Part shown: in pieces, positions 5,559-56,579 of the stretch
Layout of the letters: each line of letters starts with the position of its first letter
Position numbering within the stretch: position 1 is the stretch's first letter
Virus record (IMG/VR): IMGVR_UViG_3300017917_001996
Location: 186,001-250,000 of that record
Reading direction: 5' to 3' (one strand)
Length of the DNA stretch: 64,000 nt
The notes under the pieces: model-generated
What the model saw: only the letters and a program-made list of their open reading frames with translations
The model's database searches: none
What the model was told of the DNA's origin: nothing
Translations under genes and position numbers: made by a program

Positions 5559-5587
5559 TTGACAAAACTAAAACTAGGCTATATAAT
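5559..5587 (+). promoter_or_regulatory. sigma70-type promoter, probably leaderless
   Basis: TTGACA(5559)-N17-TATAAT(5582-5587); ATG 5 nt downstream; no SD. Confidence 0.8.
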
Positions 5588-5592
5588 AGCGT

Positions 5593-8500
5593 ATGAAAAT
5601 TGCTATTATAGATATAATTGGGCTTCCGTATGATGGTACAACGGTACACAATCAAGGACTAGGCGGAAGTGAAAGCGCAGTAACATTCATGGCCGAGCAG
5701 CTGGCTCGGTTGAATTTTGATGTAACTGTTTTTAATAACTGCAACATTGATCACGCCCGTCCTGGGGTATATTCGGGTGTACTGTATAGACCACTTGAAG
5801 ATCTAACTCAAGATCACGAGTTTGATATTGTTATTAGCAGCCGAACTATAATTCCATTTGTTGACCCACACAGGTATCACGAACTTAACGACAATCGTGC
5901 ATTTGCACTGCAACACTATAATCTCTATGACCGTGTAGTCTCCCGAGCACAAATGAGAATTCTTTGGATGCATGACACCTTTTGTCTAGGTGATAACATG
6001 ATCGAAGAGTTGGCTGTCAGCAATCGGATTACCGATATCTTTACACTAAGTGACTTTCATCTAACCTATGTGGCTAACTGCCATCACGGACGCCGCAGAA
6101 ATTTTGAAGTACTTAAACCAAAGTTGTTTATTACTAGAAACGGTGCTAACTGTTATCACAAAGAAATCGATCTAAAGAAAAAAGACCCAAATCTCTTTGT
6201 CTATAATGCCAGTGTGACCAAAGGAATGATACCCTTGGTTAATGAAGTTTGGCCAAGATTAAAAGCACAAATACCCGAAGCTCGGTTAAAGGTAATCGGT
6301 GGTTATTACAGATTTAGCGAAAGCTCGGGACCCGATCAGCAAGAACAAGATTGGCGACGAATGGTTGCTGATTCAAGGTATGCTGAGTTGGATATTGAGT
6401 TCACCGGAGTTATTCCACAAAAAGCAATCGGTGACATCTTAGCAGAATCTAATTTTATGATATACCCAACGGCGTTTCCTGAAACGTTTGGAATATCAAC
6501 ATTAGAATCATTACTTTACAATACTCCAGCAATTACTTGTAGATTCGGTGCTCTTGAAGAAATTGCAGTCGAAGGTGCTTGTTACCTAATAGACTATGCC
6601 GTTGAACCTAACAGTTTATTTCCTGATATCAATCGAGTTGAGCAAGTACAAAAATTTGTAGACCTGGCTGTACGTGCTTATCGTGATCCATATCTACATC
6701 AACAAAAACAACAATACTGTAACGTGGTCAAAGACATCGCTGGTTGGGATAGTGTAGCTCTACAGTGGAAGCAGCATTTCTATAAGAAAGCTGGAGAGTA
6801 TTTGTCGCGAGACGAATATCGTGCTGTGAGCAAAATCAATCACAAAGTGCACAAAATTTGGAATCGTCGATACACTAACCCTATAGAGTTTGAACACTAC
6901 AAGCCGGGTAATGAACAACCCATTGTGGTTGTGAGTACATTCTATAACTGTGCCAACTACATTGCACGTTGCATCAAAAGTGTAGCCTCTCAAGATTACG
7001 ATAATTACAGTGTCTACCTGGTTAATGATGCCAGCACAGACAACACGCTAGAAGTAATCAACCAAACATTATCCACATTGCCTGTGGATATTAGATCAAA
7101 GTTTAAAACAATCAATCGTGATACAAATGTTGGTGCAGTAAAAAATCAAGTTGAAGTATTTAGAAGTATTCGAGATCCTGAATCAATTGTTATGATTCTA
7201 GATGGCGACGACAGTTTAATAAACAACAATTCCATTTTTAGCTACTACAATTCTATCTATGATGGAACAACAGAGTTTACCTATGGTAGCTGTTGGAGTA
7301 TGGTTGACCGCATACCTTTGATCAGCCAACCTTATCCAGAACACATCAAACAGTCTCGAGCATATAGAGAGCATAGGTTTAATTGGAATATGCCTTACAC
7401 GCATCTTCGCACATTTAAACAATATTTGATTAACAATATTAACAATTCGGTATTCAAGGATCAAGATGGTAATTGGTTCCGTGCTGGCGGCGATGGTGCT
7501 ACTTTTTATAACTTAATTGAAGCAGCTGATCCAGATAAGGTTAAATGCTTACAGGAAGTTGTCTATAACTACAACGACACTAATCCACTGAATGATTACA
7601 AGATAAATGGTCACGAACAAAATAAAACTGCCGATGCTATTCTAAATCAAAAGAAAACAGAAAGCAAATTGTATTCGGTGATTGTTCCTACAATGTGGAA
7701 GACTGCTAAAACATTTGCAGGCTTTGCCAAATCTTTGTGTGCACACCCGTTAGTGGGCGAATTAATCATTATTAATAATCAAAGTGAGTTGACCCCTGAA
7801 GGACTCAACAATCCTAAAATTAGAATGATCGATCCGGGCAGAAATATCTATGTTAATCCTGCCTGGAACCTAGGAGTAAAAACAAGCAGATACGATCGTT
7901 TGTGTATTGTCAATGACGATGTTATATTTGATCTGACTGTACTAGAACGATTAAAAGATAGGCTAACACCCGAATCAGGAGTATTTGGACTTTGTCCTGG
8001 TGTAGCCGATTTTAACCAACCTCCGGTTATTAACGGTAATATCGATATTATTCCATGGTCTGGCCAACACACCTACGGCTTTGGTTGCTTGATGTTTATA
8101 CACAAAAAGTCTTGGCGAGAGATTCCTGCAGGATTAGAAATTTACTATGGCGACAACTTTATCTTTGACTTGCAGCTACATGAAAAGAAAACTAACTATC
8201 TAATAACCAACATGTTGTTCAAGTCCCAGTTTGCAGCCACGACATCAGACAAATCTATTACTGCTGGATTCTTAGAAAAAGAAACACCGATTTACGAACA
8301 AATAAAAAGCCAAGGATTTACAACTAAAAAACAAGAGATAGCACCTGCTATAAACAAAACCGCAATGCCTAAAAAAAGAATTTTAATTGCTATCCCTACT
8401 GCACGTAACATAGAAGCAGAAACATTTAAAAGCATATATGATTTAGAAATACCCGAAGGGTATACTGCCACGTTCCAATACTTCTATGGTTACAACGTTG

Positions 8501-10620: not shown

Positions 10621-10656
10621 TTGATCTTTTGATTGGCATTTGCTATAGTAGCAAAT
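10621..10656 (+). promoter_or_regulatory. sigma70-type promoter with extended -10, overlapped by an 8-bp palindrome
   Basis: TTGATC-N17-TATAGT with TG at 10641; ATTTGCTA-TAG-TAGCAAAT at 10638-10656; ATG 10657. Confidence 0.65.
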
Positions 10657-11058
10657 ATGAAAAAAGTGTTTGTTAACGGCTCCTTTGATTTATTACATCC
10701 TGGGCACATTAAGTTATTAAATACTGCTCGTAGTCTAGGTGACTATCTAATGGTAGCCATAGACTCTGATCGACGAATAGCCGAAAAGAAAGGTCCAGAC
10801 CGTCCTGTTAACAATCAATTTACTAGATACGTTTTGATGAGCAACATCAAAGCAGTTGATCAAGTTGTTGTTTTTGACAGCGACAGTGAATTAGAAGATA
10901 TTATTAAAAATTTTCAACCAGACATTATGATGGTAGGCAGCGACTGGCGAGGACGTACAGTAATTGGATCGCAGTATGCAGGCCATTTAGAGTTTTTCGA
11001 AAGACAAGATGATTATTCAACTACCAGTATACTCCAAAATTATATTAATCGGAGATAA
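10657..11058 (+). CDS. Sugar-phosphate nucleotidyltransferase (RfaE/HldE domain II or TagD-like cytidylyltransferase family)
   Basis: GSFDLLHPGH (HxGH), IDSDRRI, KGPDRP, VGSDW, YSTTSI. Start placed at ATG 10657 after the promoter. Confidence 0.85.
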   Translation: MKKVFVNGSFDLLHPGHIKLLNTARSLGDYLMVAIDSDRRIAEKKGPDRPVNNQFTRYVLMSNIKAVDQVVVFDSDSELEDIIKNFQPDIMMVGSDWRGRTVIGSQYAGHLEFFERQDDYSTTSILQNYINRR

Positions 11059-12431: not shown

Positions 12432-12837
12432 CTTCGGCTACTTTAATTTTAGCCATAATAGTTTCTGAGTTAAAAGTTCTATTAACGCCAGGGTGTGTAG
12501 GTTTCGGAATAGAGGTCAATGGCACCCAAGCATAACCTACGTGTTCATTGTTTAACACAGGAACAAACTCGTACTCAACAGCAATAAAAAACGTATGGTA
12601 AACAAACTGTTCGTTGTTGCTGGTAAACATCTCAATGGGTACCATTTTAGGTGCAATGATAGTACCACCTAGTTCTTCTAGGATTTCTCTTTCTAGTCCC
12701 TGTGAAACAGTTTCGCCAGGGTTTATCTTTCCGCCTGGTAAACCCCATGTTGCTGACCAACTTCCTGACCCTCGTAACAAGAAAAGATAACGCTGAGTAT
12801 CTTTAGCATAAATCAGTGCGCCAACACCTTCGGTCAA
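12415..12837 (-). CDS. NUDIX hydrolase
   Basis: GGKINPGETVSQGLEREILEELG Nudix box. Start placed at the TTG overlapping the upstream TGA; the ORF track extends it to 12906. Confidence 0.85.
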   Translation of the reverse strand: MTEGVGALIYAKDTQRYLFLLRGSGSWSATWGLPGGKINPGETVSQGLEREILEELGGTIIAPKMVPIEMFTSNNEQFVYHTFFIAVEYEFVPVLNNEHVGYAWVPLTSIPKPTHPGVNRTFNSETIMAKIKVAEVNCNA

Positions 12838-14216
12838 GGCACGAAACTCCACGCCCCTGCGCCGTAACGTCCTTCCACTGATTTGGTCCATTGATTGTCT
12901 TTCCATTTGTATTGAGTATTAGTTCTAAGGTTGGTTACGTATTTTACATTAGTTGAGGCATTACTGTCAAAGGAAACAGTCCACTTAGCACCATCAAATT
13001 CAATAATATCATTGGTTTGAGCAATTAACTCAGGTTGACCTGGCTTGTGCCAAACGGCTGCGCCTTCGTCGTTGGCTGCATTGCCAATGTCATTGAGTAT
13101 CAAATACCTTGTTCCAGCAGCTGGTGTAAGTAAATCAGAATCTACTTTAACGTTTAAAGGATCAATGATTGCAGTGACAGGAGCAAGGTTATTAGCCGGA
13201 AGAGTGTCAATGATAGGTGTAAACAATAATAATGTAGCATCGCTTGGATGATATGCTACAGTACCGACTACAGTGGTTCCTGCTTGACTTAGTCTGATTT
13301 GACTGATGCCGTTGGTTAATGTTCCGTAATCTCTAATAATATCGACCCATTTTATATCATTAGTAGTAAATGAAGTAGCACCTGGTATAAAATCACTGGT
13401 GTAATCTGATGTAGAAATTTTCAATGTGTTGCCTATATACAGAACACCATAATTCGAAGGTGTGTAGATTCGTCTAGACAGTAACGTTGATTGACTTAGA
13501 TCAAATGTACCAGCAGCATGGTCGATGGTATTATTTGAATCCCATATGCTTTCAATGATACGCTGTATGACGCCCATCTTTTTAACTTTAGCAGGTGCAC
13601 TAAACCAAATTGGAATATCAAATGTTAATGTGGCTATGTCAATGGCGTCTTCGGCACCCATTGGAATTGTGCGGCTAGTAAAGTTAGTATCGGTTAATGT
13701 AACGTAGGTTAAGCTGGTCCAGTCTACATAGTTGTCTGTGCTTTGTATTTCTAAACTTGGATTGAACAAAACTGAAATTTGTTCTAGTAACTGTAACTTT
13801 TGCTCAGTATTACTGGTCCAGATATCGCATTTTAACGTCAGCATATATGGAACAGGCATTAATCTTTCAACTGTAATTAAGTCTCCCTGTTCGCTTGTAA
13901 ACTCGCCTGCTTCATTAATAGCACGTTCACGAAGATGTACCTTGCTGACATGGAATGGTTCTTGCATTCTTTTTTGGTCATAGCGTAATGCACTAATGTA
14001 CACACTCATAGCAGGCACAGTTGGTGTACTGTTTTCGCTATTGTTGCGTAGAATCATAGCTACCTGGCGGCTGCCGTCACCGTAATATATAGGTACCTGA
14101 AGTAGTGTAGGATTTCCTTGGTCATTGTATCCAATGGCCACTTGGAAATTACTCATCATCCTTATAAACTGCTGTAAGAATCTTCTTATCTGCCCTGAGT
14201 AAAAATATGAATTCAT
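12834..14216 (-). CDS. gp15: Tail sheath stabiliser / tail completion protein, T4 gp15-like, with C-terminal extension
   Basis: YFYSGQIRRF...QVPIYYG...PAMSVYISALRYD...PVPY pattern; adjacent to the neck gene. Confidence 0.65.
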   Translation of the reverse strand: MNSYFYSGQIRRFLQQFIRMMSNFQVAIGYNDQGNPTLLQVPIYYGDGSRQVAMILRNNSENSTPTVPAMSVYISALRYDQKRMQEPFHVSKVHLRERAINEAGEFTSEQGDLITVERLMPVPYMLTLKCDIWTSNTEQKLQLLEQISVLFNPSLEIQSTDNYVDWTSLTYVTLTDTNFTSRTIPMGAEDAIDIATLTFDIPIWFSAPAKVKKMGVIQRIIESIWDSNNTIDHAAGTFDLSQSTLLSRRIYTPSNYGVLYIGNTLKISTSDYTSDFIPGATSFTTNDIKWVDIIRDYGTLTNGISQIRLSQAGTTVVGTVAYHPSDATLLLFTPIIDTLPANNLAPVTAIIDPLNVKVDSDLLTPAAGTRYLILNDIGNAANDEGAAVWHKPGQPELIAQTNDIIEFDGAKWTVSFDSNASTNVKYVTNLRTNTQYKWKDNQWTKSVEGRYGAGAWSFVP

Positions 14217-14221
14217 TTTAA

Positions 14222-15331
14222 TTATTTGTAATCAGCACGAGGTTTCAATACTTCGTGTAAGTTTTGTTTTTCGTTGTGCGTATTACCATTCTTATCAACA
14301 AAGGTATTGCTATTGTTGATAAAGGTGTTACGTAGTGTATCATTACCATCGACACCATTGGTCAAATTGGTTCTTACAGAATCTTCGATCTTAATCCAAC
14401 GACGGCCGTCATATCTAAATAACCTATTTGGCATGTAATCAACACGCAGGCAGTAATCTCCTGTTGCAGGATTAGCTGGAAAACTAATACCAGAGGTCAT
14501 TGGTAAACCGTTTGGTGTTGAACCATCGCCAGTTAGATAACCTTTAACTGAAAAGTCCGGTGTTTCTGCGTTTTTAGATTTATGATAGATAGGAATAGTG
14601 TCGTATCCACTGCGTGGAACTTCAGTTTCTGCTTGTTCAACAATAGCGTCATTGATAAATTTATAGTTGTTGTAGGTACTAATCAAATCACCTAATGGTG
14701 TAGAATCAGGTTCGCCATCACCATCTGTGTCCACTGTCTTAATATTCTTAAGTATGTCTTTGTATTCTTGGCTATCTACTAGAGGATTTAATTTAACACG
14801 CCAAATGTGTGGCCACCAAGTTGCGCTAAATCCTTCAGAACTTCTAGTACAGTCGCTGACCACAAAGAAACGTTTTAGTGCAGCAGGTAAATCTGGGTTC
14901 AGCGCATCATAATCAGTTAGGTGTACTAACTCAAGTACGTCGCCGTTCATGATCCTACGCCCTAGAGTTTCAACCATGTCATTTAAGTGAAATGACATGA
15001 ATAGAGTACCTGTTTGTAAAAATAAACCAAATTGCGTTAGATCAAAGTCATTGTCGCTAACGGTGTAAATACCTCGTAGGCTGTAAACACTGGTATCGTA
15101 TTTGCGATCTCTGTTTTCCAAAAATAGTAAATCTTGGATGTTGAGTTCGCTTTGTGTAGTGTACGCAGGCCTAGTAGCATCTCCGGGTGGTTGATTGCTA
15201 GCTGCGGCACCTAGATATTTGTGTACTAAGATAGACGTACCGCCGATAAAAAACATCTCTGACATTCTGCGGTCAAAGAATTTGTAATCGTTTGTATGTT
15301 TGCCGTCTTTCCAAAGTGATAAACGTGGCAC
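14222..15331 (-). CDS. gp14: Neck / head-closure protein, T4 gp14-like
   Basis: QDLLFLENRDRKYD...LTQFGLF...MSFHLN...GRRIMNGDVLEL pattern; late promoter upstream. Confidence 0.6.
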   Translation of the reverse strand: MPRLSLWKDGKHTNDYKFFDRRMSEMFFIGGTSILVHKYLGAAASNQPPGDATRPAYTTQSELNIQDLLFLENRDRKYDTSVYSLRGIYTVSDNDFDLTQFGLFLQTGTLFMSFHLNDMVETLGRRIMNGDVLELVHLTDYDALNPDLPAALKRFFVVSDCTRSSEGFSATWWPHIWRVKLNPLVDSQEYKDILKNIKTVDTDGDGEPDSTPLGDLISTYNNYKFINDAIVEQAETEVPRSGYDTIPIYHKSKNAETPDFSVKGYLTGDGSTPNGLPMTSGISFPANPATGDYCLRVDYMPNRLFRYDGRRWIKIEDSVRTNLTNGVDGNDTLRNTFINNSNTFVDKNGNTHNEKQNLHEVLKPRADYK

Positions 15332-15364: not shown

Positions 15365-15393
15365 TTGACAGGCTAACCGTTTTAGTGTATAAT
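15365..15393 (+). promoter_or_regulatory. sigma70-type promoter, back-to-back with the late promoter
   Basis: TTGACA-N17-TATAAT; ATG 15401 is 7 nt downstream. Confidence 0.8.
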
Positions 15394-15400
15394 TACAGTT

Positions 15401-15667
15401 ATGGACGACTTAGAAGCTGCAAAACAACGTTATGAAGCAATTTTGCCTGCGGCTACTGCAATTCGCAGTTCCAACGTCTGGATTGACTTACGTAGGATGA
15501 CTCGAAATTGTGTCAAAATCTTGGATGAAATCAGCAAAGAAAGTGTTGTTTGTAGACAACGGCATACGGTCACTGCAAAATATAATACTTTAGTTAAAGA
15601 TTATGTAGAAGCTGTAGATGTACTAGAAAAGTACGTAATGCTGGCACACCTATCTGGAGCCAGTTGA
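15401..15667 (+). CDS. Hypothetical protein (88 aa)
   Basis: ORF directly after a consensus promoter. Confidence 0.65.
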   Translation: MDDLEAAKQRYEAILPAATAIRSSNVWIDLRRMTRNCVKILDEISKESVVCRQRHTVTAKYNTLVKDYVEAVDVLEKYVMLAHLSGAS

Positions 15668-18487: not shown

Positions 18488-18495
18488 TATAAATA
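18488..18495 (+). promoter_or_regulatory. T4 late promoter TATAAATA
   Basis: Exact consensus; ATG at 18501. Confidence 0.7.
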
Positions 18496-18504
18496 ATTAT
18501 ATGA

Positions 18505-18933
18505 GTGAAGAGATTTTTATTAAAATCTACTAGAAATAAAATGTCAAAATCTCAACTCAAACGTTTTCAAAAAAATAACGGAACTTTCCTCGGAAGGGCA
18601 CACAGCGTTGAGACGCGAGCAAAAATGTCACAGAAAGCATCACGACCTAAATCAGACAAATGGAGAGAGAGTGCATCTAAGAATAGAAAAGGTAGACAGG
18701 CACATAATAAAGGTATTTTACATTCAGAAGAAACTAAGCAAAAAATAAGAGAATCAGTTAAAGGTGAAAAAAACGGATTTTATGGTAAACACCATTCCGC
18801 TGAACAACGTGAAAAAAAACGACAGGAAAAACTTACATCTCCTAGACATACTTGTCCTCATTGTAGTAAAATAGTTGATGCAATGAATTATGCTAGATGG
18901 CACGGCAATAATTGTAAAAAGAGGATTATATGA
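18505..18933 (+). CDS. NUMOD3-repeat protein without a nuclease domain (homing-endonuclease remnant)
   Basis: HSVETRAKMS, HSEETKQKIRES, KNGFYGKHHS; C-terminal CPHC...RWHGNNCK; A-rich DNA. Confidence 0.6.
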   Translation: MKRFLLKSTRNKMSKSQLKRFQKNNGTFLGRAHSVETRAKMSQKASRPKSDKWRESASKNRKGRQAHNKGILHSEETKQKIRESVKGEKNGFYGKHHSAEQREKKRQEKLTSPRHTCPHCSKIVDAMNYARWHGNNCKKRII

Positions 18934-19538: not shown

Positions 19539-19863
19539 TTGGACCAGGCCGCCAACCAGTTTTTGTTATTTCTGCTTGGCAGTTCAAACACACTGTTTTT
19601 AAGTTAGCCCAATTGATGTTGTCTGTATTTCCGTCTGTATAGAACACATTTGACTGACTAAGGAACTTAAACTTAAACCCACAGCGGTCACATTTATCAG
19701 ATTTGCGGTAACCCGAGCGATACCAATTTGGTGCCTCGGGCTTTACCTTTTTTCCTCTGTGAATACAGCTAATGCAGGTTGTTCGATAATAAGCCTTACC
19801 ATTGCGGTAGTAGTTTAATGACACAGGATATTGTCGGCAAACAGGGCATATCTTTCTTTGCAT
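19522..19863 (-). CDS. Zn-binding protein with a degenerate HNH-like C-terminus
   Basis: CPVC...CISC; CDRCG...FYTDGNTDNINWANLKTVCLNC. Start placed at ATG 19863, 5 nt after GATAAGTA. Confidence 0.6.
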   Translation of the reverse strand: MQRKICPVCRQYPVSLNYYRNGKAYYRTTCISCIHRGKKVKPEAPNWYRSGYRKSDKCDRCGFKFKFLSQSNVFYTDGNTDNINWANLKTVCLNCQAEITKTGWRPGPIIPDF

Positions 19864-19928
19864 ATACTTACTTATCCTTAAAGGACCATGTAAAGGACCG
19901 CTAACCAGCTCGTTTTTGTAACTTAAAA

Positions 19929-26132: not shown

Positions 26133-26563
26133 GTAAGTACGCACAAGGAAAGTATCAGATAAAAAATCCCGAAAAGTACACAGGCCGTAAAACCCCTACA
26201 TACCGTAGTTCGTGGGAATTTACATTTTGTACTTTTTGCGACAATAACCCAGCAGTGATACAATGGGCCAGTGAACCCTTTATGATTCCTTACAGGAATC
26301 CTTTAACTGGTAAGAATACTATATACGTTCCAGATTTTTTAATTGTGTACATGGATAAAAATCAGCAAAAACACGCTGAAGTAATTGAAGTAAAACCATT
26401 GAAAGAAACAACATTTGAGTCAGCTAAGACTGTTAGAGATAAAGCCGCTGTAGCACTTAATATGGCTAAATGGGAAGCTGCTCGTGCTTTTTGTAAGTCA
26501 TACGGGTTAAAGTTTAGAGTAGTTACAGAACATGATATCTATCAGGGCGCCCGCCGCCGATAA
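26129..26563 (+). CDS. gp4: Head completion nuclease (T4 gp4-like, TnsA-like fold)
   Basis: KNPEKY...YRSSWE...WASE...IPY...YVPDF...IEVKP...N.AKWEAA..FC......FRVVTE. Confidence 0.88.
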   Translation: MSKYAQGKYQIKNPEKYTGRKTPTYRSSWEFTFCTFCDNNPAVIQWASEPFMIPYRNPLTGKNTIYVPDFLIVYMDKNQQKHAEVIEVKPLKETTFESAKTVRDKAAVALNMAKWEAARAFCKSYGLKFRVVTEHDIYQGARRR

Positions 26564-26571
26564 ATATTCAT

Positions 26572-29262: not shown

Positions 29263-29293
29263 TTTTTTTACCTTACTGGTGATAAATAAACAT

Positions 29294-31016: not shown

Positions 31017-31024
31017 TATAAATA
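31017..31024 (+). promoter_or_regulatory. T4 late promoter TATAAATA
   Basis: Exact consensus, 5 nt before ATG 31030; would drive the HNH gene and the IntC-TerL(C) gene. Confidence 0.75.
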
Positions 31025-37757: not shown

Positions 37758-38018
37758 GTGAAAACATCTCAGCAACGGGCACAAGATTTACTAGATCAAT
37801 GGCAGCAGTTTAGAACCAGTGGTATCTGTGCCGATCTTTGGAATATACAAGAAAGCAAAGAGCAGCTAGAGCACCTTGCTCTTGGATTGTCTACTATTCT
37901 ATACTGTAATCCTGAAGATGTTAGTTTGGATCAGTCTTGTCAAGACTTTGAGCGTGAGCTTAGTAGATTTAAAAACAAAATCTACGACGACCTGCTCAAG
38001 GGTTTAAAAACTAAATAA
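37758..38018 (+). CDS. Hypothetical protein
   Basis: GTG directly after the uvsY stop, in the ORF-track frame. Confidence 0.5.
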   Translation: MKTSQQRAQDLLDQWQQFRTSGICADLWNIQESKEQLEHLALGLSTILYCNPEDVSLDQSCQDFERELSRFKNKIYDDLLKGLKTK

Positions 38019-38023
38019 CAGTT

Positions 38024-39556
38024 ATGCGAGATCTAATTAATATCATCACTGAATCACGTGGGCTTGGCGCACGTAAACCTGGCGAGGAGTTTGTTAATAC
38101 AACTAACCCCGAAGACAAAATCTTTATTAAAAGCGTGAGCTTTTACCCTGAAGATCGAGTTGCCTATGGTTCGTATGAAGAAATGGCCGCGGCGCTACAG
38201 AAAATTGTTAACGCTATCCCTAACGCCTATGTTGATTTAATTGGTAAATTTACTAACAAGGATCTAGCATTTGGTATTGCTATATTCTCTCGTCCTGGCT
38301 CGCAGGATCTAGCATTTGTAAAACCATACCGCGCAGTTAAGCCGGACCCAACACAAAACGCCTGGGATAATCAAACGGGTATTCCCGGTTTTAGATATAA
38401 CAGTAAATCGGCAGCTAAAACACAAGCAGGTATGACACCTCAGGATGTGTTAACCAAGCTGTCTGACCTAACTGCACAAGAAGTAGTAGACCAAGTTCAC
38501 GCTAAGTTTGGATCAACAAGTCCGTTGACTAAGTTTGCACAGTCTATTGCAGCAGGACAAAAACTTCCTATTGCTATTCCTGCAGATTCCACCATGAGCT
38601 TCTCGGCGTTTAGAGATTACTTCTGTGAACTCATGCATCCTATTGCACTACAGACAGGTAACTACAAAGGCAATGCTGGCGAAGCTGCCAGTAAGTTTTT
38701 AGGTGTTGGTGGTTTTGCTGAAACATTGATTAGTTTTGGTTCAGATAAGACCGAAGGACTCAGTGACAGTATTTTGATATCCGACACTGGCAAGAAAATT
38801 AAAGTAAGTAGTAAAGGTGCAGTTGGCGCAGAAGCCAGTAGCAAGAACGTTCTTGATGCTATCAATGAACTACAAGACTCTGATCTTAATAAAAAACACG
38901 CAGAAGTTATTGACTTGGTAAGAGACGTAGTTAAAGGTGGCCAAGGTGGTGCTCCATTGATATTGGGTGTTCGTTACAAAATCATTGGTACCGAGGATGC
39001 ACAAGACATACAAAACTTTAAAAAACTTCCTCCGACTAACTTGGATGCAGTTGCTCAGATGAAATTGAGCCCAAAATTAAAAAAGTTAATTGAAGAAAGA
39101 AACACAAACACACCTGAAAATTTAAATTTGTATTTTCACAGCATAGCCGCAGTAGCACATAAGGTCGCAGAATATGTTAACGAAAATACTAATTTCAGCC
39201 AGGCAGTTAGCGAGATACTAAACAACGGTGCTTTGGTCCAAGTTTACACCAAAGCCACAGAATCACCTACAGAATGGACAGTACAATCGTTTACAACCGT
39301 CTGGCCTAGCAATACAGTTACTGGTGTTAAGTTCAGCGCCAGCAAAACCTACTACAGTACAGGCATCAAAGGCAACTTTACATTTAAAATTCTACGTAAC
39401 GGTGCTAAAGACGTAGAGGATGAGCGTTCTACAGATGTAGCTATGCAATCCAAAGAGCCTGTGGCTACACCTGGTGTGCTTACAGGAAAACGCACCGAGA
39501 TACGACCAACTCGTGACAAAAAACCCACAGGAGATGTGGGCAGAGAAAAAAGATAA
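38024..39556 (+). CDS. Probable internal head protein (leader MRDLINIITE), possible PD-(D/E)xK-like fold
   Basis: Late promoter CTAAATA at 38011; E...SD...KVSSKG pattern. Confidence 0.6.
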   Translation: MRDLINIITESRGLGARKPGEEFVNTTNPEDKIFIKSVSFYPEDRVAYGSYEEMAAALQKIVNAIPNAYVDLIGKFTNKDLAFGIAIFSRPGSQDLAFVKPYRAVKPDPTQNAWDNQTGIPGFRYNSKSAAKTQAGMTPQDVLTKLSDLTAQEVVDQVHAKFGSTSPLTKFAQSIAAGQKLPIAIPADSTMSFSAFRDYFCELMHPIALQTGNYKGNAGEAASKFLGVGGFAETLISFGSDKTEGLSDSILISDTGKKIKVSSKGAVGAEASSKNVLDAINELQDSDLNKKHAEVIDLVRDVVKGGQGGAPLILGVRYKIIGTEDAQDIQNFKKLPPTNLDAVAQMKLSPKLKKLIEERNTNTPENLNLYFHSIAAVAHKVAEYVNENTNFSQAVSEILNNGALVQVYTKATESPTEWTVQSFTTVWPSNTVTGVKFSASKTYYSTGIKGNFTFKILRNGAKDVEDERSTDVAMQSKEPVATPGVLTGKRTEIRPTRDKKPTGDVGREKR

Positions 39557-45126: not shown

Positions 45127-45190
45127 TACTTTTTGTGTACTAAAACCCTGTTCTTGACAGGGTTTTATTTTGGCAGTATAATTAGGGCAT
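45122..45190 (+). promoter_or_regulatory. Strong sigma70 promoter with an inverted repeat across the -35 box (copy 1 of a conserved element)
   Basis: AAAACCCTG-TTCTTGA-CAGGGTTTT; TTGACA(45154)-N17-TATAAT(45177); upstream TGTAATACTT..GTACTA. Confidence 0.8.
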
Positions 45191-45209
45191 GTCCAACAAG
45201 GAGATGCTG

Positions 45210-45536
45210 ATGCAAACTACATACCTCGACACTAAAGAAGCACCTAACAAGTGGTTTGCTCTGCAAGATCGTCGTATGCGTAATCACGCAAATCGTACAC
45301 TGTACACCGATGCCCAACAAGTTCGCCTTGAGCGCATTCGCCTTGCCCTGGAGATGGTTGTGCGCGGTACTGTTTACGAAGTTGCATACGGCCGTCGTAG
45401 CGCATCTGTAAAAGTACAAAACGGTGCAATCATTGCAGATCGTAAAATGTTGGCCTTGCTCGAATCAGACTGGAGTAAGGAAGGTATCACCAAGAAAGAA
45501 ACACCGCAAGGTTTTCAATATCACATGCCTCTTTGA
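45210..45536 (+). CDS. Hypothetical early protein
   Basis: SD AAGGAG favours ATG 45210; the ORF track starts at 45189. Confidence 0.65.
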   Translation: MQTTYLDTKEAPNKWFALQDRRMRNHANRTLYTDAQQVRLERIRLALEMVVRGTVYEVAYGRRSASVKVQNGAIIADRKMLALLESDWSKEGITKKETPQGFQYHMPL

Positions 45537-52598: not shown

Positions 52599-52906
52599 CC
52601 ACATACATTGCTTACTTTGATAGTCTTGGGTTTGAGTTTATATTCGACTTGACTAACTATGAGCACGAGCAGTTGCTAGGTATACTTGGCGACAAGCCAA
52701 TAAGTAATCGTATTCCGCAATACGCTATCCTTCGTGCCAAGTCAAACCCACAAAGATTTCCTGAAATCTGGGCGTTTGATTCTGATGTAGACCAAAACAC
52801 TTTAGATGAGTTAGCAAGGGAATCGCCGCAGATGCTAGCCGACTTAATTAGGAAACACGGCGAGCCAATATATCAAACTCCAAAACAAAAGTCAGTTATA
52901 GTTTAA
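52595..52906 (+). CDS. Hypothetical protein
   Basis: ATGA overlap; ends at a terminator. Confidence 0.6.
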   Translation: MTTYIAYFDSLGFEFIFDLTNYEHEQLLGILGDKPISNRIPQYAILRAKSNPQRFPEIWAFDSDVDQNTLDELARESPQMLADLIRKHGEPIYQTPKQKSVIV

Positions 52907-52931
52907 TACCCGGAGCCCCGGGTATTTTTTT
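52905..52931 (+). terminator. Rho-independent terminator abutting the next -35 box
   Basis: AATACCCGG-AGCC-CCGGGTATT followed by a T run. Confidence 0.8.
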
Positions 52932-52958
52932 GACATTATCCTAGTAGTATGCTAAACT
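52930..52958 (+). promoter_or_regulatory. sigma70-type promoter, probably leaderless
   Basis: TTGACA-N17-TAAACT with extended TG; ATG 6 nt downstream. Confidence 0.7.
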
Positions 52959-52964
52959 TATAAG

Positions 52965-54092
52965 ATGCAAAAACAGTCTTTTCGTTACCTAGAAGATTAT
53001 ATTGAATACCTTGCTGGATTCCCTATGACTAATAATGTTAGGCCGGGTACAGTGAGCTTGGCTAGATACGACACGCAGATTGTTGCTAGTATTGCAAACC
53101 AAACGTTCAATGGTACCGGCTTCAGTGATCGACAAGCCCTACTAGCTCATAAGTTGGTAGTAAAGTATAAAAGGCAATTTGCCAACAATGGAATTCTAAT
53201 TGGCGAACATGAAGAAGACCCAAAGTTTCGATTACCACTTAGACAAGTTGATCGTTCTAAAATTATTACCCTTAATGATAAAAAAATTGTTGTACGTTTT
53301 CCCTACGACGTTAAAATGATTGATGCTCTACGAGAGTATGGTAAAAAGATTCCCAGCGAGTTGAGATTTAACAAACCCAATCGACAGTGGGAAGCTGACA
53401 TTACTGAACCAAGAGTTCTTTGGGCCTGCGAGTTTGCTGATAAATATGAGTTTGAGATTGATACGGTATTGCTAGAGCTTAGAGAAAAGATCGATCATTG
53501 CCAACAAATAAGGTATGCCATTGAGCTGGATTATGTTGACAATCAGATAGTTATTTCTAATGCTGAGTCTAGTCTATTAGATTATATTAACAGCAACGTT
53601 GGTGGACTTGGCAAAGACAATCTACTAAACTTAATTGACCAAAGTAGCATTTTAGGCTACACGGTTAGTGAAAAGATCATTACACTCTATGACTTCGGCC
53701 AAGTTGACAAAAGGTTAGCACTAAAGAAAGAAAGTCATTTTCCTTGGAATGACGAAGGCAGCTTTGAAAAAATCGTAGACTATGCTGAATGGTCGCAAAG
53801 ATATCCTATATTTGTTTTTGATCCATTGAACGAAAATAAACCTAATAACCCAGTCCTTGAAAAATTAAAAAATCATTTTAAAGACGAGTTAGAAGTAGTC
53901 GGCGCTCGACAAAAACGTATCGATTACCAAAATAAGAAGTGTGTATACTTAACCCACTGGCATTCTAGCTGGCAAATGAAGATTCCTTTGCTGGTTACAC
54001 TAACAGGGCTAATGGTTGGGTTAAAGAAACAACACATACTTCAGCACTCAGAAAAGATTGTATTTTCTTCTGAGATTCTCTATAATCCATAA
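52965..54092 (+). CDS. Hypothetical protein with a possible HARP-like segment, upstream of UvsW
   Basis: VVRFPYDVKMIDALRE...RFNKPNRQWE. Confidence 0.6.
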   Translation: MQKQSFRYLEDYIEYLAGFPMTNNVRPGTVSLARYDTQIVASIANQTFNGTGFSDRQALLAHKLVVKYKRQFANNGILIGEHEEDPKFRLPLRQVDRSKIITLNDKKIVVRFPYDVKMIDALREYGKKIPSELRFNKPNRQWEADITEPRVLWACEFADKYEFEIDTVLLELREKIDHCQQIRYAIELDYVDNQIVISNAESSLLDYINSNVGGLGKDNLLNLIDQSSILGYTVSEKIITLYDFGQVDKRLALKKESHFPWNDEGSFEKIVDYAEWSQRYPIFVFDPLNENKPNNPVLEKLKNHFKDELEVVGARQKRIDYQNKKCVYLTHWHSSWQMKIPLLVTLTGLMVGLKKQHILQHSEKIVFSSEILYNP

Positions 54093-54093
54093 T

Positions 54094-55587
54094 ATGCCTG
54101 AATGTATACTAGAAATACTTGACGAAGTAAACGTAAAAATTAAAGGGTTGGATTTAGACAGCCGTCGCCAACTAGTCAATCGATATAAATTTGAAATTCC
54201 TGGAGCAAGGTATTTGCCTGCTGTACGTCTAGGTCGTTGGGATGGCAAAGTAAGTTATTTTCAACTCAGTGGCAGTACTTATATTAACCTGTTGCCGGAA
54301 ATTTTACCTTGGTTAGAAGAACGGGGCTACAATGTTGAACTAGAAGATCAACGTGATTATCGCACACAGTTCAGCTTTGAGCAAGTACACGAAAAAAGTT
54401 TTGAGCACATACTGTGGCCCAAAGGACATCCTGCTGAAGGAAAGCCTATCATGCTACGTGACTACCAAGTTGAGGTAGTTAATAAGTTCTTGTCCAATCC
54501 ACAGTGTATACAGGAAATCGCCACTGGTGCTGGTAAGACAATTATGACTGCTGCCTTGAGCAATGCAGTTAGTCCTTATGGCCGTAGCATTGTTATTGTA
54601 CCTAACAAAGACCTAGTTCGCCAAACAGAAAAAGACTACATTAACATGCAACTGGATGTTGGTGTTTACTTTGGCGACCGCAAAGAATACAATAGGCGGC
54701 ACACTATCTGCACTTGGCAAAGTCTTAATGTTATGCTTAAGAATACCAAGAACCACGAAGCAGAAGTTACTATACACGAATTCTTAGAGGATGTAGTGTG
54801 CGTGATCGTTGACGAAGTGCACATGGCCAAGGCTGATGTACTTAAACAACTGCTAACAGGTCCTATGTCTCGAGTGCCGCTACGTTGGGGTCTAACTGGT
54901 ACAATACCCAAAGAGAAATATGAATTTATGAGCTTGTTCTGTAGTATTGGACAAGTCATTGGACGTCTCAGAGCCAGCGAACTGCAAGAGCAAGGTGTGC
55001 TGGCGCAGTGCCATGTTAACATTGTTCAGTTAGTTGAGTATGCAGAATACAGCAACTATCAAAGCGAATTGAAGTACTTGCTGGAAAACGATAAAAGAAT
55101 CGCTTACATCAGTAAGATGATCAGCAGAATCAAGGATTCGGGTAACACATTGATTCTAGTGGACAGGATTGGTGCAGGCAAGGCATTACAAGCTCATCTC
55201 AGCTCGTTGTTTAGTGTATTAAAAGATGCACCCGACGTAGTGTTTATTTCGGGCAGTACCAAGTCTGCTGATCGTCAAGATGAATACGAACAAGTTAGCA
55301 CAGCAAATAACAAGGTTATGATTGCTACCTACGGTGTAGCTGCTGTGGGCATTAACATTCCACGAATTTTCAATCTAGTGCTAATTGAGCCTGGCAAGAG
55401 CTTTGTGCGTGTTATCCAAAGTATCGGGCGTGGCATTCGTAAAGCCGAAGACAAAGACTTTGTACAGATCTGGGACATTACCAGCACCTGCAAGTTTGCC
55501 AAGAGACACCTAACACAGAGAAAGAACTTTTACAAAGAAGCCAACTATCCATTTACCATAGACAAAGTTGACTATCAAAAACAATAA
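54094..55587 (+). CDS. uvsW: SF2 DNA helicase, UvsW-like
   Basis: LRDYQ, ATGAGKT, IVDEVH, GLTGT, GINIP, QSIGRGIR; promoter TTGTAT-N17-TATAAT at 54058-54086. Confidence 0.9.
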   Translation: MPECILEILDEVNVKIKGLDLDSRRQLVNRYKFEIPGARYLPAVRLGRWDGKVSYFQLSGSTYINLLPEILPWLEERGYNVELEDQRDYRTQFSFEQVHEKSFEHILWPKGHPAEGKPIMLRDYQVEVVNKFLSNPQCIQEIATGAGKTIMTAALSNAVSPYGRSIVIVPNKDLVRQTEKDYINMQLDVGVYFGDRKEYNRRHTICTWQSLNVMLKNTKNHEAEVTIHEFLEDVVCVIVDEVHMAKADVLKQLLTGPMSRVPLRWGLTGTIPKEKYEFMSLFCSIGQVIGRLRASELQEQGVLAQCHVNIVQLVEYAEYSNYQSELKYLLENDKRIAYISKMISRIKDSGNTLILVDRIGAGKALQAHLSSLFSVLKDAPDVVFISGSTKSADRQDEYEQVSTANNKVMIATYGVAAVGINIPRIFNLVLIEPGKSFVRVIQSIGRGIRKAEDKDFVQIWDITSTCKFAKRHLTQRKNFYKEANYPFTIDKVDYQKQ

Positions 55588-55598
55588 AGAAAAACAAT

Positions 55599-56108
55599 AT
55601 GTCAAGAATTTTAAACTTAGATACCAATCGTGCATACGATATGAACGAGATACCCGAAGAGGTTGATGACCTTAGGTTCTGTGTGCTAGATAACAGCGAC
55701 CCGAAGAATCCTGATTACTTTTTTATACCATTAATCTTTTTAGAGAGCTTTAATAGCCCTGCACTGGTACTAAAAATTGGACCTTGGACAGTTAAAATGC
55801 CTGTGGACTGGCAACTGTTAATTGGCGAAAAGGATCTGGGCGATCTAGAAGTAGTACCATTGACCAGTATTAATGATCGCGGCTTTTGTGCATTTTGCTT
55901 TAATCCTATTAGCAGCTTTAGACCTGAATTTCATCCAGTTGAAATTGTAGACATCTATCAAGATGTTAAATGGTATTTTCCTAAACTCAAGCCCGGACAG
56001 ATGTTGGCAGTACCATTGGAGTCAGATACTGATAAACCTATGTGCGTGTATTTTGTCAAAGAGATTAGCCGAATGAGCGAAGTAGTTGATTTTAGCAAGG
56101 CATGGTAA
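55599..56108 (+). CDS. Hypothetical protein, possibly a degenerate Hint fold
   Basis: Beta-rich pattern LKIGPWTVKMPVDWQLLI...EIVDIYQDVKWYFP. Confidence 0.55.
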   Translation: MSRILNLDTNRAYDMNEIPEEVDDLRFCVLDNSDPKNPDYFFIPLIFLESFNSPALVLKIGPWTVKMPVDWQLLIGEKDLGDLEVVPLTSINDRGFCAFCFNPISSFRPEFHPVEIVDIYQDVKWYFPKLKPGQMLAVPLESDTDKPMCVYFVKEISRMSEVVDFSKAW

Positions 56109-56120
56109 TATAATACAGCT

Positions 56121-56579
56121 ATGAGTGATAAACTAAACATTGCCAACGAAATGCGAGCCTTTGATAACAAGGATCGCGGTTTCTATGATAGCCTAACTGA
56201 AGAAGAACGCAAGAAGTTCAGCACCTACTTAATGCTCAAGTGGGGCGCCAACGTAGAAGGCAGTCCCGAATTGCAAGAATGGTATTTGCGTGTGGTCAAT
56301 GATCGTGTAAATCTTAACTTTTTTGATTTAGGAAGACATCCTAAGTTGCAGTGGCTTCTGTGTACAACGGTGAGCCCTGGGCTAGGAGTAAAACGTCACT
56401 ATTGGATTACTTCCAAGCGTGGTAGTACCAGCAAAGCATATAAGTTTATTGAAAAACAATATCCTCATCTTAAACCCGATGAAATTGAACTGATGTTGCA
56501 GATCAACAGTCCAGATCAAATTAAGAGTTATGCACGAGCATTGGGTTGGGATGATAAACAGATCAAATCTGAGCTATGA
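56121..56579 (+). CDS. gp62: Clamp-loader small subunit (T4 gp62-like)
   Basis: FSTYLMLKW...HPKLQWLLC...KRHYWI; promoter TTGATT-N17-TATAAT at 56086-56114. Confidence 0.55.
   Translation: MSDKLNIANEMRAFDNKDRGFYDSLTEEERKKFSTYLMLKWGANVEGSPELQEWYLRVVNDRVNLNFFDLGRHPKLQWLLCTTVSPGLGVKRHYWITSKRGSTSKAYKFIEKQYPHLKPDEIELMLQINSPDQIKSYARALGWDDKQIKSEL

What the first reader, a model, noticed from the sequence alone, without database searches (positions are those of the whole stretch)
5559..56121. Widespread leaderless transcripts from both early and late promoters
Seen: sigma70 -10 boxes end 5-7 nt before SD-less start codons at 5593, 10657, 15401, 52965, 54094 and 56121. Late (T/G/C)ATAA(A/G)TA-type boxes end 5-6 nt before ATGs at 18501, 19863 (minus strand), 26572, 29294, 31030 and 38024. 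That is where transcription normally starts. Other genes (tail tube, SSB, AAA) have strong SDs. Inferred: a deliberate leaderless regulon that includes replication, glyco and homing-endonuclease genes, perhaps resistant to host translational shutoff or anti-SD-targeting stress responses.
Basis: partly seen in the sequence, partly recalled or inferred. Interest (0 to 1): 0.6.

Follow-up and report, generated by a model that had tools for sequence, protein, structure and literature searches.

The report
Leaderless genes in a jumbo phage
In this uncultivated giant T4-related phage and hundreds of its freshwater relatives, about a tenth of the genes have an early or late promoter box so close to the ATG that the mRNA should begin at the start codon, with no ribosome-binding leader. 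This layout was known from Thermus phages but, in the literature I could search, not from T4-type late promoters.

Summary
Ten of the 12 named sites have a promoter -10 box ending 5-7 nt before an SD-less ATG that is a plausible true start. Site 18501 opens only a 10-codon ORF and is a relic of a homing-endonuclease 5' end. Sites 54094 and 19863(-) are weaker.

In the whole 250-kb genome, 19 of 33 ATGs lying 4-8 nt after TAAATA open long ORFs (2 expected, p=3e-15). Gaps of 9-14 nt are nearly empty, and a second mode at 15-39 nt carries SD sequences.

The geometry is conserved in orthologues on hundreds of related metagenomic contigs while the surrounding sequence drifts: 57/58, 66/78 and 23/31 distinct upstreams for three genes. 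These starts are almost always ATG (197:2:1), have a pyrimidine at -1, lack SD and have unstructured 5' ends. The modal gaps (5 nt late, 6-7 nt early) equal the canonical box-to-start distances. The phage encodes a gp55-type late sigma.

T4, PA5oct, Phosso and an outgroup set lack the pattern.

No RNA data exist, so the start sites remain predicted. Compact, promoter-gated translation is my preferred, inferred function.

The parts
5559..5595 (+). Early-type promoter (TTGACA, 17 nt, TATAAT) plus a 5-nt gap and the ATG of a 1352-aa multi-glycosyltransferase/FkbM methyltransferase gene (5593-9651).
   Evidence: The 37-nt intergenic space is entirely promoter. Among orthologues, 54 of 55 distinct upstreams lack SD and 33 have a -10-like box 4-8 nt before the ATG; most of the rest have one at 9-11 nt.
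10621..10659 (+). Early-type promoter (TTGATC, 17 nt, TG-extended TATAGT), 7-nt gap, ATG of a 133-aa cytidylyl/heptose-adenylyltransferase gene (10657-11058).
   Evidence: phrog_7878 aligns residues 1-129 to profile positions 1-128. Homologues in other phages start with the same MKKVF. The promoter itself is not shared by those unrelated phages.
15365..15403 (+). Perfect early-type promoter (12/12), 7-nt gap, ATG of an 88-aa protein of unknown function (15401-15667), in a divergent intergenic region.
   Evidence: SD dG is +0.1 and there is no SD-backed alternative start. No relatives were recovered for this gene.
52905..52967 (+). Terminator hairpin (52905-52926), then early-type promoter (52930-52958), 6-nt gap, ATG of a 375-aa protein of unknown function (52965-54092).
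   Evidence: 23 of 31 distinct orthologue upstreams keep the layout T-run, TTGAC, 17 nt, -10 box, 5-7 nt, ATG, at only 30-46% protein identity.
54058..54096 (+). Weak early-type promoter (TTGTAT, 17 nt, TATAAT), 7-nt gap, ATG of the UvsW-like helicase gene (54094-55587). The ATG lies 1 nt after the upstream stop codon.
   Evidence: 24 of 60 orthologue upstreams have a -10 box 4-8 nt before the ATG, often with a strong -35 and after a terminator. The others are SD-like or coupled within an operon. In this genome coupling is a live alternative.
56086..56123 (+). Early-type promoter (TTGATT, 17 nt, TATAAT), 6-nt gap, ATG of a 152-aa protein (56121-56579).
   Evidence: The arrangement is shared by the closest relatives only: 7-8 of 52 upstreams. 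Many others carry the promoter 23 nt upstream instead.
45154..45212 (+). Perfect early-type promoter with an ATG after 6 nt (45189), and also an in-frame ATG at 45210 behind a strong AAGGAG. Either a leaderless start or a 21-nt SD leader; ambiguous.
26559..26574 (+). Late-type box GATAAATA, 5-nt gap, ATG of a 164-aa late protein (26572-27066). The TAA inside the box is the stop codon of the head-closure gene upstream.
   Evidence: 57 of 58 distinct orthologue upstreams have an exact or one-mismatch late box (core ATAAATA; variants such as GGTAAATA, GCTAAATA) ending 3-8 nt (mode 5) before the ATG, and none has an SD.
29281..29296 (+). Late-type box GATAAATA, 5-nt gap, ATG of a GIY-YIG-like homing-endonuclease N-domain (29294-29677). 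Its NUMOD3 part lies in another reading frame (29638-30060).
   Evidence: (phrog_15526 aligned from residue 1).
31017..31032 (+). Late-type box TATAAATA, 5-nt gap, ATG of an HNH+NUMOD3 homing endonuclease (31030-31713) that sits between the two halves of the large terminase gene.
   Evidence: The paralogue at genome position 16034 has the same layout.
38010..38026 (+). Late-type box ACTAAATA, 6-nt gap, ATG of a conserved 510-aa protein of unknown fold (38024-39556), directly downstream of the UvsX/UvsY-like genes.
   Evidence: 66 of 78 distinct orthologue upstreams (34-82% identity, from IMG/VR and metagenome contigs) have TAAATA ending 4-8 nt before the ATG. At least five of the 12 exceptions carry a late-type box (exact or the variant GATAAGTA) about 21-25 nt upstream, most of them with an SD-like purine stretch in between.
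19861..19876 (-). Variant late-type box GATAAGTA, 5-nt gap, ATG (19863) of a 113-aa Zn-finger-like protein (19522-19863), divergent from the sheath gene.
   Evidence: The box has one mismatch to the core and no orthologues were recovered. Plausible but weak.
18488..18533 (+). Late-type box TATAAATA, 5-nt gap, ATG 18501 opening only 10 codons. This is a relic of a homing-endonuclease 5' end; a NUMOD3-only remnant follows in another frame (18541-18933).
   Evidence: The 19 nt that include the box, the spacer and the ATG are 18/19 identical to the start of the 31030 endonuclease gene.
12834..14248 (-). Additional candidate: a tail-sheath-family gene whose ATG (14216) lies 4 nt after AATAAT (with TTGAAA 16 nt upstream) and 6 nt after TACAAATA. 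No SD.
   Evidence: (profile aligned from residue 3).

Best explanation
The window is part of a roughly 350-kb T4-related jumbo myovirus from a pond metagenome; 250 kb of it is assembled.

About 28 of its roughly 257 genes are laid out so that RNA polymerase should start transcription on the A of the ATG, or within about 3 nt of it. That gives an mRNA with no 5' leader and no Shine-Dalgarno sequence, presumably translated by the 70S/5'-AUG pathway used for leaderless mRNAs.

Two promoter classes do this:
- Host sigma70-type early promoters (TTGACA, 17 nt, TATAAT), with the ATG 5-7 nt after the -10 box.
- T4-type late promoters (nnTAAATA, read by the phage's gp55-like sigma), with the ATG 4-8 nt (mode 5) after the box.

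About a third of the recognisable promoter-gene pairs are of this kind. The rest have leaders of 15-40 nt, most of them carrying an SD.

Shown here: the geometry, its statistical excess, its conservation across a large clade, and the covariation between promoter distance and SD.

Inferred: the start sites, 70S-type initiation, and the function. My preferred function is compact expression signals in which translation is gated by the promoter. An SD-less ATG is read only when it sits at the 5' end. The gene is therefore translated from its own early or late promoter and not from read-through transcripts of neighbouring genes of another temporal class. Homing endonucleases carry the box-plus-ATG as a minimal portable cassette.
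For: 1. Excess and shape of the distribution.
- 19 of 33 ATGs lying 4-8 nt after TAAATA open long ORFs (2.0 expected, p=2.6e-15). Control gaps of 0-3 and 9-13 nt give 0/11 and 1/7.
- The full early pattern (TTGAC, spacer, TAnnnT, 5-7 nt, ATG) occurs 8 times against 1.8+-1.0 in shuffles.
- The gap histogram has a peak at 4-8 nt (19 sites), a trough at 9-14 (1), and further modes at 15-25 and 31-39.
- Among strong early promoters, 6 are ATG-adjacent and 15 are SD-led.

2. Conservation in orthologues while the flanks diverge.
- w26572: 57/58 distinct upstreams.
- w38024: 66/78.
- w52965: 23/31.
- w5593: 33/55 with a box at 4-8 nt, and most of the rest at 9-11 nt.
- Helicase: 24/60.
- One orthologue of genome gene 13947 swaps a late box for an early promoter but keeps the 6-nt gap.
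- Across 3949 start contexts in the clade, the TAAATA gap peaks at 4-8 (197) and again at 17-27 (217). Early-type promoters peak at 5-7 (69).

3. Signatures of leaderless starts.
- SD is present in 0-7% of adjacent starts, against 70% of leadered early starts and 45% of leadered late starts.
- Start codons at adjacent positions are ATG:GTG:TTG = 197:2:1, against 217:9:33 at leadered positions.
- The base at -1 is a pyrimidine in 99% of gap-5 late sites and in 24/28 sites in this genome.
- The first 36 nt are unusually unstructured: mean MFE -1.6 against -4.1 for random ATG-started 36-mers (p=2e-7).

4. Geometry matches the canon. The T4 TATA box occupies -13 to -6 (PMC2988020), which leaves 5 nt before +1, and 5 nt is the modal late gap here. 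The 6-7-nt early gap is the usual sigma70 distance (established knowledge).

5. The phage encodes a gp55-type late sigma: E=1.4e-6 to T4 gp55, and phrog_12791 at 1.9e-56.

6. N-termini are supported by profiles that align from residue 1-3 and by orthologue alignments with zero offset.

7. Controls lack the peak:
- 80 loci of other phages: TAAATA at 4-8 nt once, against about 50 at 17-36 nt.
- T4: 6 pattern hits against 11 for the reversed control pattern, and the two hits I checked are not gene starts.
- The PA5oct and Phosso orthologues are SD-led.
Against: - No transcription start site has been measured. The only runs that hold this DNA are metagenomic DNA contigs.
- Several sites lie 1-12 nt after the upstream stop codon (54094, 38024, 26572, 56121). 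Termination-reinitiation coupling could translate these without an SD, and in w26572 the TAA of the box doubles as that stop codon.
- At gaps of 7-11 nt (some w5593 orthologues; genome 13947 and 84600) the start would more likely fall 2-4 nt upstream of the ATG, giving very short leaders and not strictly leaderless mRNAs.
- The host is unknown, so its capacity for leaderless translation is unknown.
- The genome is only about 71% complete.
- The gating function is pure inference.
Confidence: 0.78

Rival explanations
1. The SD-less ATGs are translated inside polycistronic mRNAs, by termination-reinitiation coupling or by S1 binding to A/U-rich sequence. On this view the -10-like boxes are incidental A/T-rich sequence, stop codons, or promoters irrelevant to translation of that ATG.
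For: - Intergenic distances are 1, 5, 8 and 12 nt at 54094, 38024, 26572 and 56121.
- The TAA inside the 26572 box is the stop codon of the upstream gene.
- Many helicase orthologues sit in an operon context without any promoter.
- A/U-rich translational enhancers are established knowledge.
Against: - The same arrangement occurs after terminators and in divergent or long intergenic regions: 5593, 15401, 52965, genome 129960, and many orthologues.
- The early class has a complete -35 box, 17-nt spacer and -10 box.
- The same TAAATA box lies 15-39 nt upstream of SD-led genes, which fits a promoter and not a ribosome-binding element.
- The two classes peak at different gaps, and each peak equals that class's own box-to-start distance.
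- Coupling would not demand ATG over GTG/TTG, nor a pyrimidine at -1.
- The outgroup phages and T4 lack the peak.
Confidence: 0.12
2. The boxes are real promoters, but the ATG next to them is not the start codon that is used. Translation would begin at a downstream SD-led codon, so the transcripts have ordinary leaders that happen to begin with an in-frame ATG.
For: - At 45189 an in-frame ATG 7 codons downstream has a strong AAGGAG.
- At 58614 the family profile begins aligning at residue 28, and an SD-backed ATG lies at codon 27.
- Genome 31865(-) and 18573(-) also have SD-backed alternatives.
Against:
- Family profiles and orthologues align from residue 1-3 at 10657, 29294, 54094 and genome 13947 and 31999.
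- The N-terminal residues are conserved from the ATG onward in orthologues.
- ATG is used almost exclusively at the adjacent position.
Confidence: 0.06
3. The conserved motif is an RNA processing signal. A phage or host endoribonuclease would cut just upstream of the AUG and create leaderless mRNAs after transcription.
For: MazF-type generation of leaderless mRNAs has been proposed in E. coli (my own knowledge, and disputed). The motif sits at a fixed distance from the AUG.
Against: - The motif is the T4 late-promoter consensus and the phage encodes gp55.
- The early class has -35 boxes, which an RNA signal would not need.
- No PemK/MazF gene was found.
Confidence: 0.02
4. The juxtapositions are chance in an A/T-rich genome.
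For: Weak sigma70-like matches are no more frequent than in shuffled sequence (29 against 28.4, and 35 against 34.0). TAAATA-N4-8-ATG as a bare pattern is not over-represented (33 against 28.9).
Against: What is enriched is the coincidence with true ORF starts (p=2.6e-15), the sharp gap peak with empty flanks, and conservation across hundreds of diverged contigs.
Confidence: 0.01

Closest known systems
Thermus phages phiYS40 and Lalka27a (leaderless transcription strategy)
   Same: Most transcripts of these phages start with the A or G of the initiator codon, from host-type and phage-modified promoter classes (bioRxiv 10.64898/2026.04.20.719267, which cites Sevostyanova 2007). Here too, both early and late classes place the -10 element next to the start codon.
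   Different: - Those phages infect Deinococcus-Thermus hosts, where a -10 box adjacent to the ORF is the host norm (PMC12340547).
- Their late boxes differ (TAGGGT).
- Their start sites were mapped experimentally.
- Here the phage is a T4-related jumbo myovirus whose nearest cultured relatives infect Proteobacteria. Only about a third of its promoters are of this kind, the late box is the gp55-type TATAAATA, and nothing has been mapped.
T4 late promoters (gp55/gp33/gp45 system)
   Same: An 8-bp TATAAATA-type box at -13..-6 with no -35 element and an A/T-rich spacer. The variants (A/G)C at -13/-12 are known from Aeh1. A gp55 homologue is present.
   Different: T4 shows no excess of ATGs 3-9 nt after the box (6 hits against 11 for the reversed control), and the hits I checked are not gene starts. 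T4 late mRNAs have SD-bearing leaders (established knowledge).
Lambda cI mRNA from PRM, and other single leaderless genes in E. coli phages and transposons
   Same: A sigma70 promoter whose +1 is the A of the AUG. Translation depends on a 5'-terminal AUG (Brock et al. 2008, cited in PMC5312081).
   Different: Those are isolated regulatory genes. Here there are dozens of genes, including structural, replication, glycosylation and homing-endonuclease genes.
Leaderless transcriptomes of Actinobacteria and Deinococcus-Thermus
   Same: A -10 box a few bp upstream of the ORF, no SD, and a large share of genes (PMC4633059, PMC12340547).
   Different: Those are cellular genomes. It is unknown whether this phage's host belongs to such a group. 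The phage also uses SD in about half of its genes.
Cultured jumbo relatives (PA5oct, Atu_ph07, Phosso, Rak2-like) and phiKZ
   Same: Shared T4-like core genes at 35-54% identity.
   Different: The orthologues I examined in PA5oct and Phosso are SD-led. dRNA-seq of phiKZ found no leaderless transcript (PMC8244752).

Membership tests
Leaderless bacterial mRNA | The transcription start coincides with (or lies within a few nt of) the first base of the start codon. | not testable with these tools
   No RNA run holds this phage, and no metagenome contig ends at the ATG. The feature is predicted from box-to-ATG gaps that equal the canonical box-to-start distances.
Leaderless bacterial mRNA | No Shine-Dalgarno sequence or usable 5' UTR. 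| tested here: met
   Anti-SD duplex dG is above -3.5 at all 19 late-type sites and at the early sites. SD is present in 0-7% of adjacent starts across the clade, against 45-70% of leadered starts.
Leaderless bacterial mRNA | Strong preference for AUG as the start codon. | tested here: met
   ATG:GTG:TTG = 197:2:1 (late) and 69:2:2 (early) at adjacent positions, against 217:9:33 and 76:7:12 at leadered positions.
Leaderless bacterial mRNA | A promoter -10 element about 5-8 nt upstream of the start codon. | tested here: met
Sigma70-type promoter | -35 TTGACA-like and -10 TATAAT-like hexamers separated by 17+-1 nt. | tested here: met
   12/12 matches at 5559, 15365 and 45154; 10/12 at 52930 and 56086; 9/12 at 10621 and 54058. 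Activity was not testable.
T4-type late promoter system | An 8-bp TATAAATA-like box without a -35 element. | tested here: met
   Core TAAATA with variable first two bases. Strand bias of 36 to 11 follows gene orientation. The upstream sequence is not conserved.
T4-type late promoter system | A phage-encoded gp55 late sigma. | tested here: met
   Genome 115407-115997: E=1.4e-6 to T4 gp55; phrog_12791 at 1.9e-56 and phrog_234 at 3.6e-22.
T4-type late promoter system | The gp33 co-activator and the gp45 sliding clamp. | tested here: inconclusive
   The gp45 search gave only a marginal hit (E=0.001) inside a 1577-aa frame. gp33 was not searched. The genome is 71% complete.
phiYS40/Lalka27a-like leaderless phage strategy | Most phage transcripts are leaderless, in a host where leaderless expression is the norm. 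| tested here: not met
   About a third of promoter-gene pairs, or about 10% of genes, are of the leaderless type. About half of the genes use SD. The host is unknown.

The most novel reading that the evidence does not exclude
An entire, abundant clade of freshwater T4-related jumbo phages has evolved promoter-gated translation as a genome-wide control layer. SD-less ATGs placed at +1 of sigma70 or gp55 promoters would be read only from their own promoter's transcripts, insulating early and late genes that are interleaved without terminators. Homing endonucleases would spread as minimal 'late box + ATG' cassettes. This would be the first case of gp55-dependent leaderless mRNAs. It would also imply that the still unknown host, or the infected cell, translates 5'-AUG mRNAs efficiently.
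Probability: 0.3. Interest if true: 0.75.

Novelty: new variant of a known kind. Interest (0 to 1): 0.62.

Why it matters
- Gene calling. Start-codon callers that rely on SD will mis-annotate this clade.
- T4 late transcription. It would extend the T4 late-transcription paradigm to transcripts without leaders.
- A testable design principle. Translation that depends on which promoter made the mRNA could be checked with simple reporter constructs.
- Homing endonucleases. It suggests how they stay expressible with about 16 nt of signal.
- Host prediction. It gives a sequence signature (a bimodal box-to-ATG distance) that can be used to screen other phage genomes, and perhaps to infer hosts able to translate leaderless mRNAs.

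Tried and rejected
- RNA evidence. I therefore did not use read laying.
- Contig ends as a proxy for transcript 5' ends. I looked for metagenome contigs that begin exactly at the ATG of the w38024 orthologue and found none. Those loci served only to replicate the motif count.
- DNA identity search. Megablast of the window against cultured phages gave no match. The w38024 protein has no tblastn hit in cultured phages.
- w10657 homologues. They come from unrelated phage lineages. They confirm the N-terminus but not the promoter.
- Missing orthologues. None were recovered for 15401, 19863(-) or 14216(-).
- Phage factors that could favour leaderless translation. No bS21, PemK/MazF or IF3_C was found, and there are no tRNAs.
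- Function of the conserved leaderless late gene w38024. No Pfam, PHROG or PDB sequence match. The AlphaFold2 model has pLDDT 77.9. Foldseek found nothing at E<=0.001 and the wide structural search reached only Z 4.4.
- Literature. I found no paper on leaderless late transcripts in T4-like or jumbo phages. The phiYS40 paper (PMC1885378) is not held.
- Chance. Considered and rejected (see the rival explanations).
- Host identity. Not resolved.

Full report
**What the window is**

The window is bases 186001-250000 of a single 250,289-bp contig with GC 0.41. The record is a linear virus genome judged 71% complete. It is held only by DNA contigs of one pond-metagenome study.

It is a jumbo myovirus with T4-like core genes:
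- an 1115-aa sheath, tail-tube paralogues, SSB, UvsX, a UvsY-like protein and a UvsW-like helicase;
- a large terminase gene that is split in two;
- many homing endonucleases.

The nearest cultured relatives are Phosso, Atu_ph07, the PA5oct group and Rak2-like phages, at only 35-54% protein identity. By contrast, hundreds of related contigs exist in IMG/VR and in lake metagenomes.

The genome encodes a gp55-type late sigma factor next to a gp47-like gene. It has no tRNAs.

**Site-by-site check**

The six early sites have a -35 box, a 17-nt spacer, a -10 box and then 5-7 nt before an ATG. The promoter at 52930 follows a terminator hairpin directly.

The late sites have an 8-mer of the T4 late type ending 5 or 6 nt before the ATG. 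None of these ATGs has an SD, while tail tube, SSB, UvsX and many other genes do.

Three caveats apply:
- The ATG at 18501 opens only ten codons and is out of frame with the NUMOD3-only remnant that follows. The 19 nt spanning the box, spacer and ATG are 18/19 identical to the start of the HNH endonuclease gene at 31030. This is therefore the relic of an endonuclease gene's 5' end and not a gene start.
- 54094 has a poor -35 box and lies 1 nt after the upstream stop codon.
- 19863(-) has a one-mismatch box and no comparators.

The internal ATGs at 10657, 29294 and 54094 are supported as true starts by family profiles that align from residue 1-3 and by homologues beginning with the same residues.

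**Genome-wide statistics**

Of 7774 ATGs on both strands, 6% sit at the top of a long ORF. Among the 33 ATGs lying 4-8 nt after TAAATA, 19 do so (2.0 expected, p=2.6e-15). At control gaps of 0-3 and 9-13 nt the figures are 0/11 and 1/7.

The gap histogram has three parts:
- a sharp peak at 4-8 nt (19 sites, mode 5);
- almost nothing at 9-14 nt;
- broad modes at 15-25 and 31-39 nt.

All 19 sites lack an SD, and 15 have no SD-backed alternative start within 40 codons.

The full early pattern followed by an ATG after 5-7 nt occurs 8 times, against 1.8+-1.0 in shuffled sequence. Among early promoters with at least 10/12 matches that can be assigned to a gene, 6 are ATG-adjacent and 15 have SD-bearing leaders.

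The late-type set includes a tail fibre, virion proteins, a baseplate wedge protein and several homing endonucleases. The early-type set includes the giant glycosyltransferase, a cytidylyltransferase, the helicase, an exonuclease and small proteins of unknown function.

**Comparative evidence**

This is the strongest line. Orthologues on related contigs keep the geometry while the surrounding sequence diverges.

| Gene | Distinct upstreams keeping the geometry | Note |
|---|---|---|
| w26572 | 57 of 58 (exact or one-mismatch late box ending 3-8 nt before ATG) | |
| w38024 | 66 of 78 (TAAATA ending 4-8 nt before ATG) | at least five of the 12 exceptions have a late-type box about 21-25 nt upstream, most with an SD-like purine stretch in between |
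| w52965 | 23 of 31 (T-run, -35, 17 nt, -10, 5-7 nt, ATG) | only 30-46% protein identity |
| w5593 | 54 of 55 lack SD | nearly all have a -10-like box 4-11 nt before the ATG, sometimes an early box overlapping a late box |
| Helicase | 24 of 60 adjacent | the rest are in an operon or promoter-distal |

One orthologue of genome gene 13947 has exchanged the late box for an early promoter yet keeps a 6-nt gap.

Pooled over the six families, 212 of 335 distinct contexts are box-adjacent, and only 2 of those carry a strong SD.

Over 3949 distinct start contexts in 328 related loci, the TAAATA gap peaks at 4-8 nt (197) and 17-27 nt (217), with a trough between. Early-type promoters peak at 5-7 nt (69).

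**Signatures expected of leaderless starts**

- SD is present at 0-7% of adjacent starts, against 70% of leadered early and 45% of leadered late starts.
- The start codon at adjacent positions is ATG in 197 cases, against 2 GTG and 1 TTG. Leadered positions show 217:9:33.
- The base before the ATG is a pyrimidine in 99% of gap-5 late sites and in 24 of 28 sites in this genome. This fits the usual pyrimidine(-1)/purine(+1) start preference.
- The first 36 nt are much less structured than random ATG-started 36-mers: mean MFE -1.6 against -4.1 (p=2e-7).
- The T4 late box occupies -13 to -6 (PMC2988020), leaving 5 nt before +1, which is the modal late gap here.
- The modal early gap of 6-7 nt is the usual sigma70 distance (established knowledge).

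Two promoter classes each placing the A of the ATG at their own +1 is hard to explain in any other way.

**Controls**

- Eighty loci from other phage lineages carry TAAATA 17-36 nt upstream of starts about 50 times, but 4-8 nt upstream only once.
- T4 has no excess of the pattern (6 hits against 11 for the reversed control), and the two hits I checked are not gene starts.
- The PA5oct and Phosso orthologues are SD-led.

The feature is therefore specific to this uncultivated clade.

**Mechanism and function**

Shown: the geometry, its excess, its conservation, and the covariation between promoter distance and SD.

Inferred: transcription starts on the ATG, and these mRNAs are translated by the 5'-AUG/70S route.

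No bS21, MazF-type RNase or IF3 gene was found. Roughly half of the phage's own genes depend on SD.

I favour compactness plus promoter-gated translation. Two examples fit this:
- w38024, a late gene, lies 5 nt after an open frame (37728-38018) that follows the UvsY-like gene (37304-37756), with no terminator that I could see.
- w5593, an early gene, follows a large gene that is probably a late fibre gene.

An SD-less ATG in read-through RNA should stay silent. Five endonuclease genes or relics (18501, 29294, 31030, and genome 16034 and 65882) carry the late box plus ATG as a minimal cassette. All of this remains to be tested.

**Relation to what is known**

Leaderless phage transcripts are documented for Thermus phages phiYS40 and Lalka27a and for single genes such as lambda cI. 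A -10 box adjacent to the ORF is common in Deinococcus-Thermus and in mycobacteria. phiKZ has no leaderless transcripts.

I found no report of leaderless transcripts from gp55-type late promoters, or in T4-related jumbo phages. I therefore rate this as a new variant of a known kind.

**What led nowhere**

No RNA runs hold this phage, and no transcript-like contig ends were found. The conserved late protein w38024 has no identifiable fold or family. The host remains unidentified.

Noticed in passing
window 30087-32758: The large terminase gene is split. 30087-31001 matches phrog_36964 positions 433-628 and 31691-32758 matches positions 626-885. An HNH+NUMOD3 homing endonuclease (31030-31713) lies between the halves and overlaps the second one. 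Whether this is an intron, an intein-free split gene or two subunits is open.
   Followed up: partly
window 29294-30060: A GIY-YIG-like endonuclease N-domain (YVY...YIGKG motif) at 29294-29677 and a NUMOD3-only part in another frame (29638-30060). This looks like a frameshifted homing endonuclease just upstream of the terminase gene.
   Followed up: partly
window 18488-18933: A decayed homing endonuclease. The late box and ATG are retained (18/19 identical to the start of the 31030 gene), followed by a 10-codon ORF and then a NUMOD3 remnant out of frame.
   Followed up: yes
window 38024-39556: A 510-aa late protein conserved throughout the clade (34-82% identity), with a confident AlphaFold2 model (pLDDT 78). 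It has no Pfam, PHROG, PDB sequence or structural match (best Z 4.4) and no homologue in cultured phages.
   Followed up: partly
window 45154-45212: A perfect sigma70-type promoter with two possible in-frame starts: an ATG at the predicted +1 (45189) and an SD-led ATG 21 nt downstream (45210). It may be a dual-mode start.
   Followed up: partly
loci L338, L340-L342, L344, L347, L363 (orthologues of w5593): In some relatives an extended -10 early box (TGTATAGT or TGTATAAT) overlaps a late TAAATA box that ends 4 nt before the ATG. This suggests the glycosyltransferase gene is served by both temporal classes from one compact element.
   Followed up: no
locus L421 (orthologue of genome gene 13947): The promoter class is swapped. 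The orthologue has an early-type promoter (TTGACT, 17 nt, TATACT) instead of the late box, but keeps a 6-nt gap to the ATG.
   Followed up: no
window 5593-11058: A glycosylation cluster: a 1352-aa protein that combines GT1, GT2 and FkbM-methyltransferase domains, a tail-fibre-assembly-like protein, and a cytidylyl/heptose-adenylyltransferase. The last has homologues scattered in unrelated phage lineages, so it has probably moved between phages.
   Followed up: partly
window 12834-14216 (-), 19967-23314 (+), 23451-25752 (+): Two sheath-family genes (460 aa and 1115 aa) and two tail-tube-family genes (205 aa and 536 aa) in one tail module.
   Followed up: no
window 59105-63067: A 1320-aa protein with a bactofilin domain and a weak Mtd_N (tropism determinant) match. 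It is probably a fibre or receptor-binding protein.
   Followed up: no
genome 115407-116997 (outside the window; locus L333): A gp55-type late sigma gene immediately followed by a gp47/SbcD-like gene.
   Followed up: yes
whole genome: No tRNA genes in 250 kb of a jumbo phage (aragorn). The record is about 71% complete, so this is not conclusive.
   Followed up: partly
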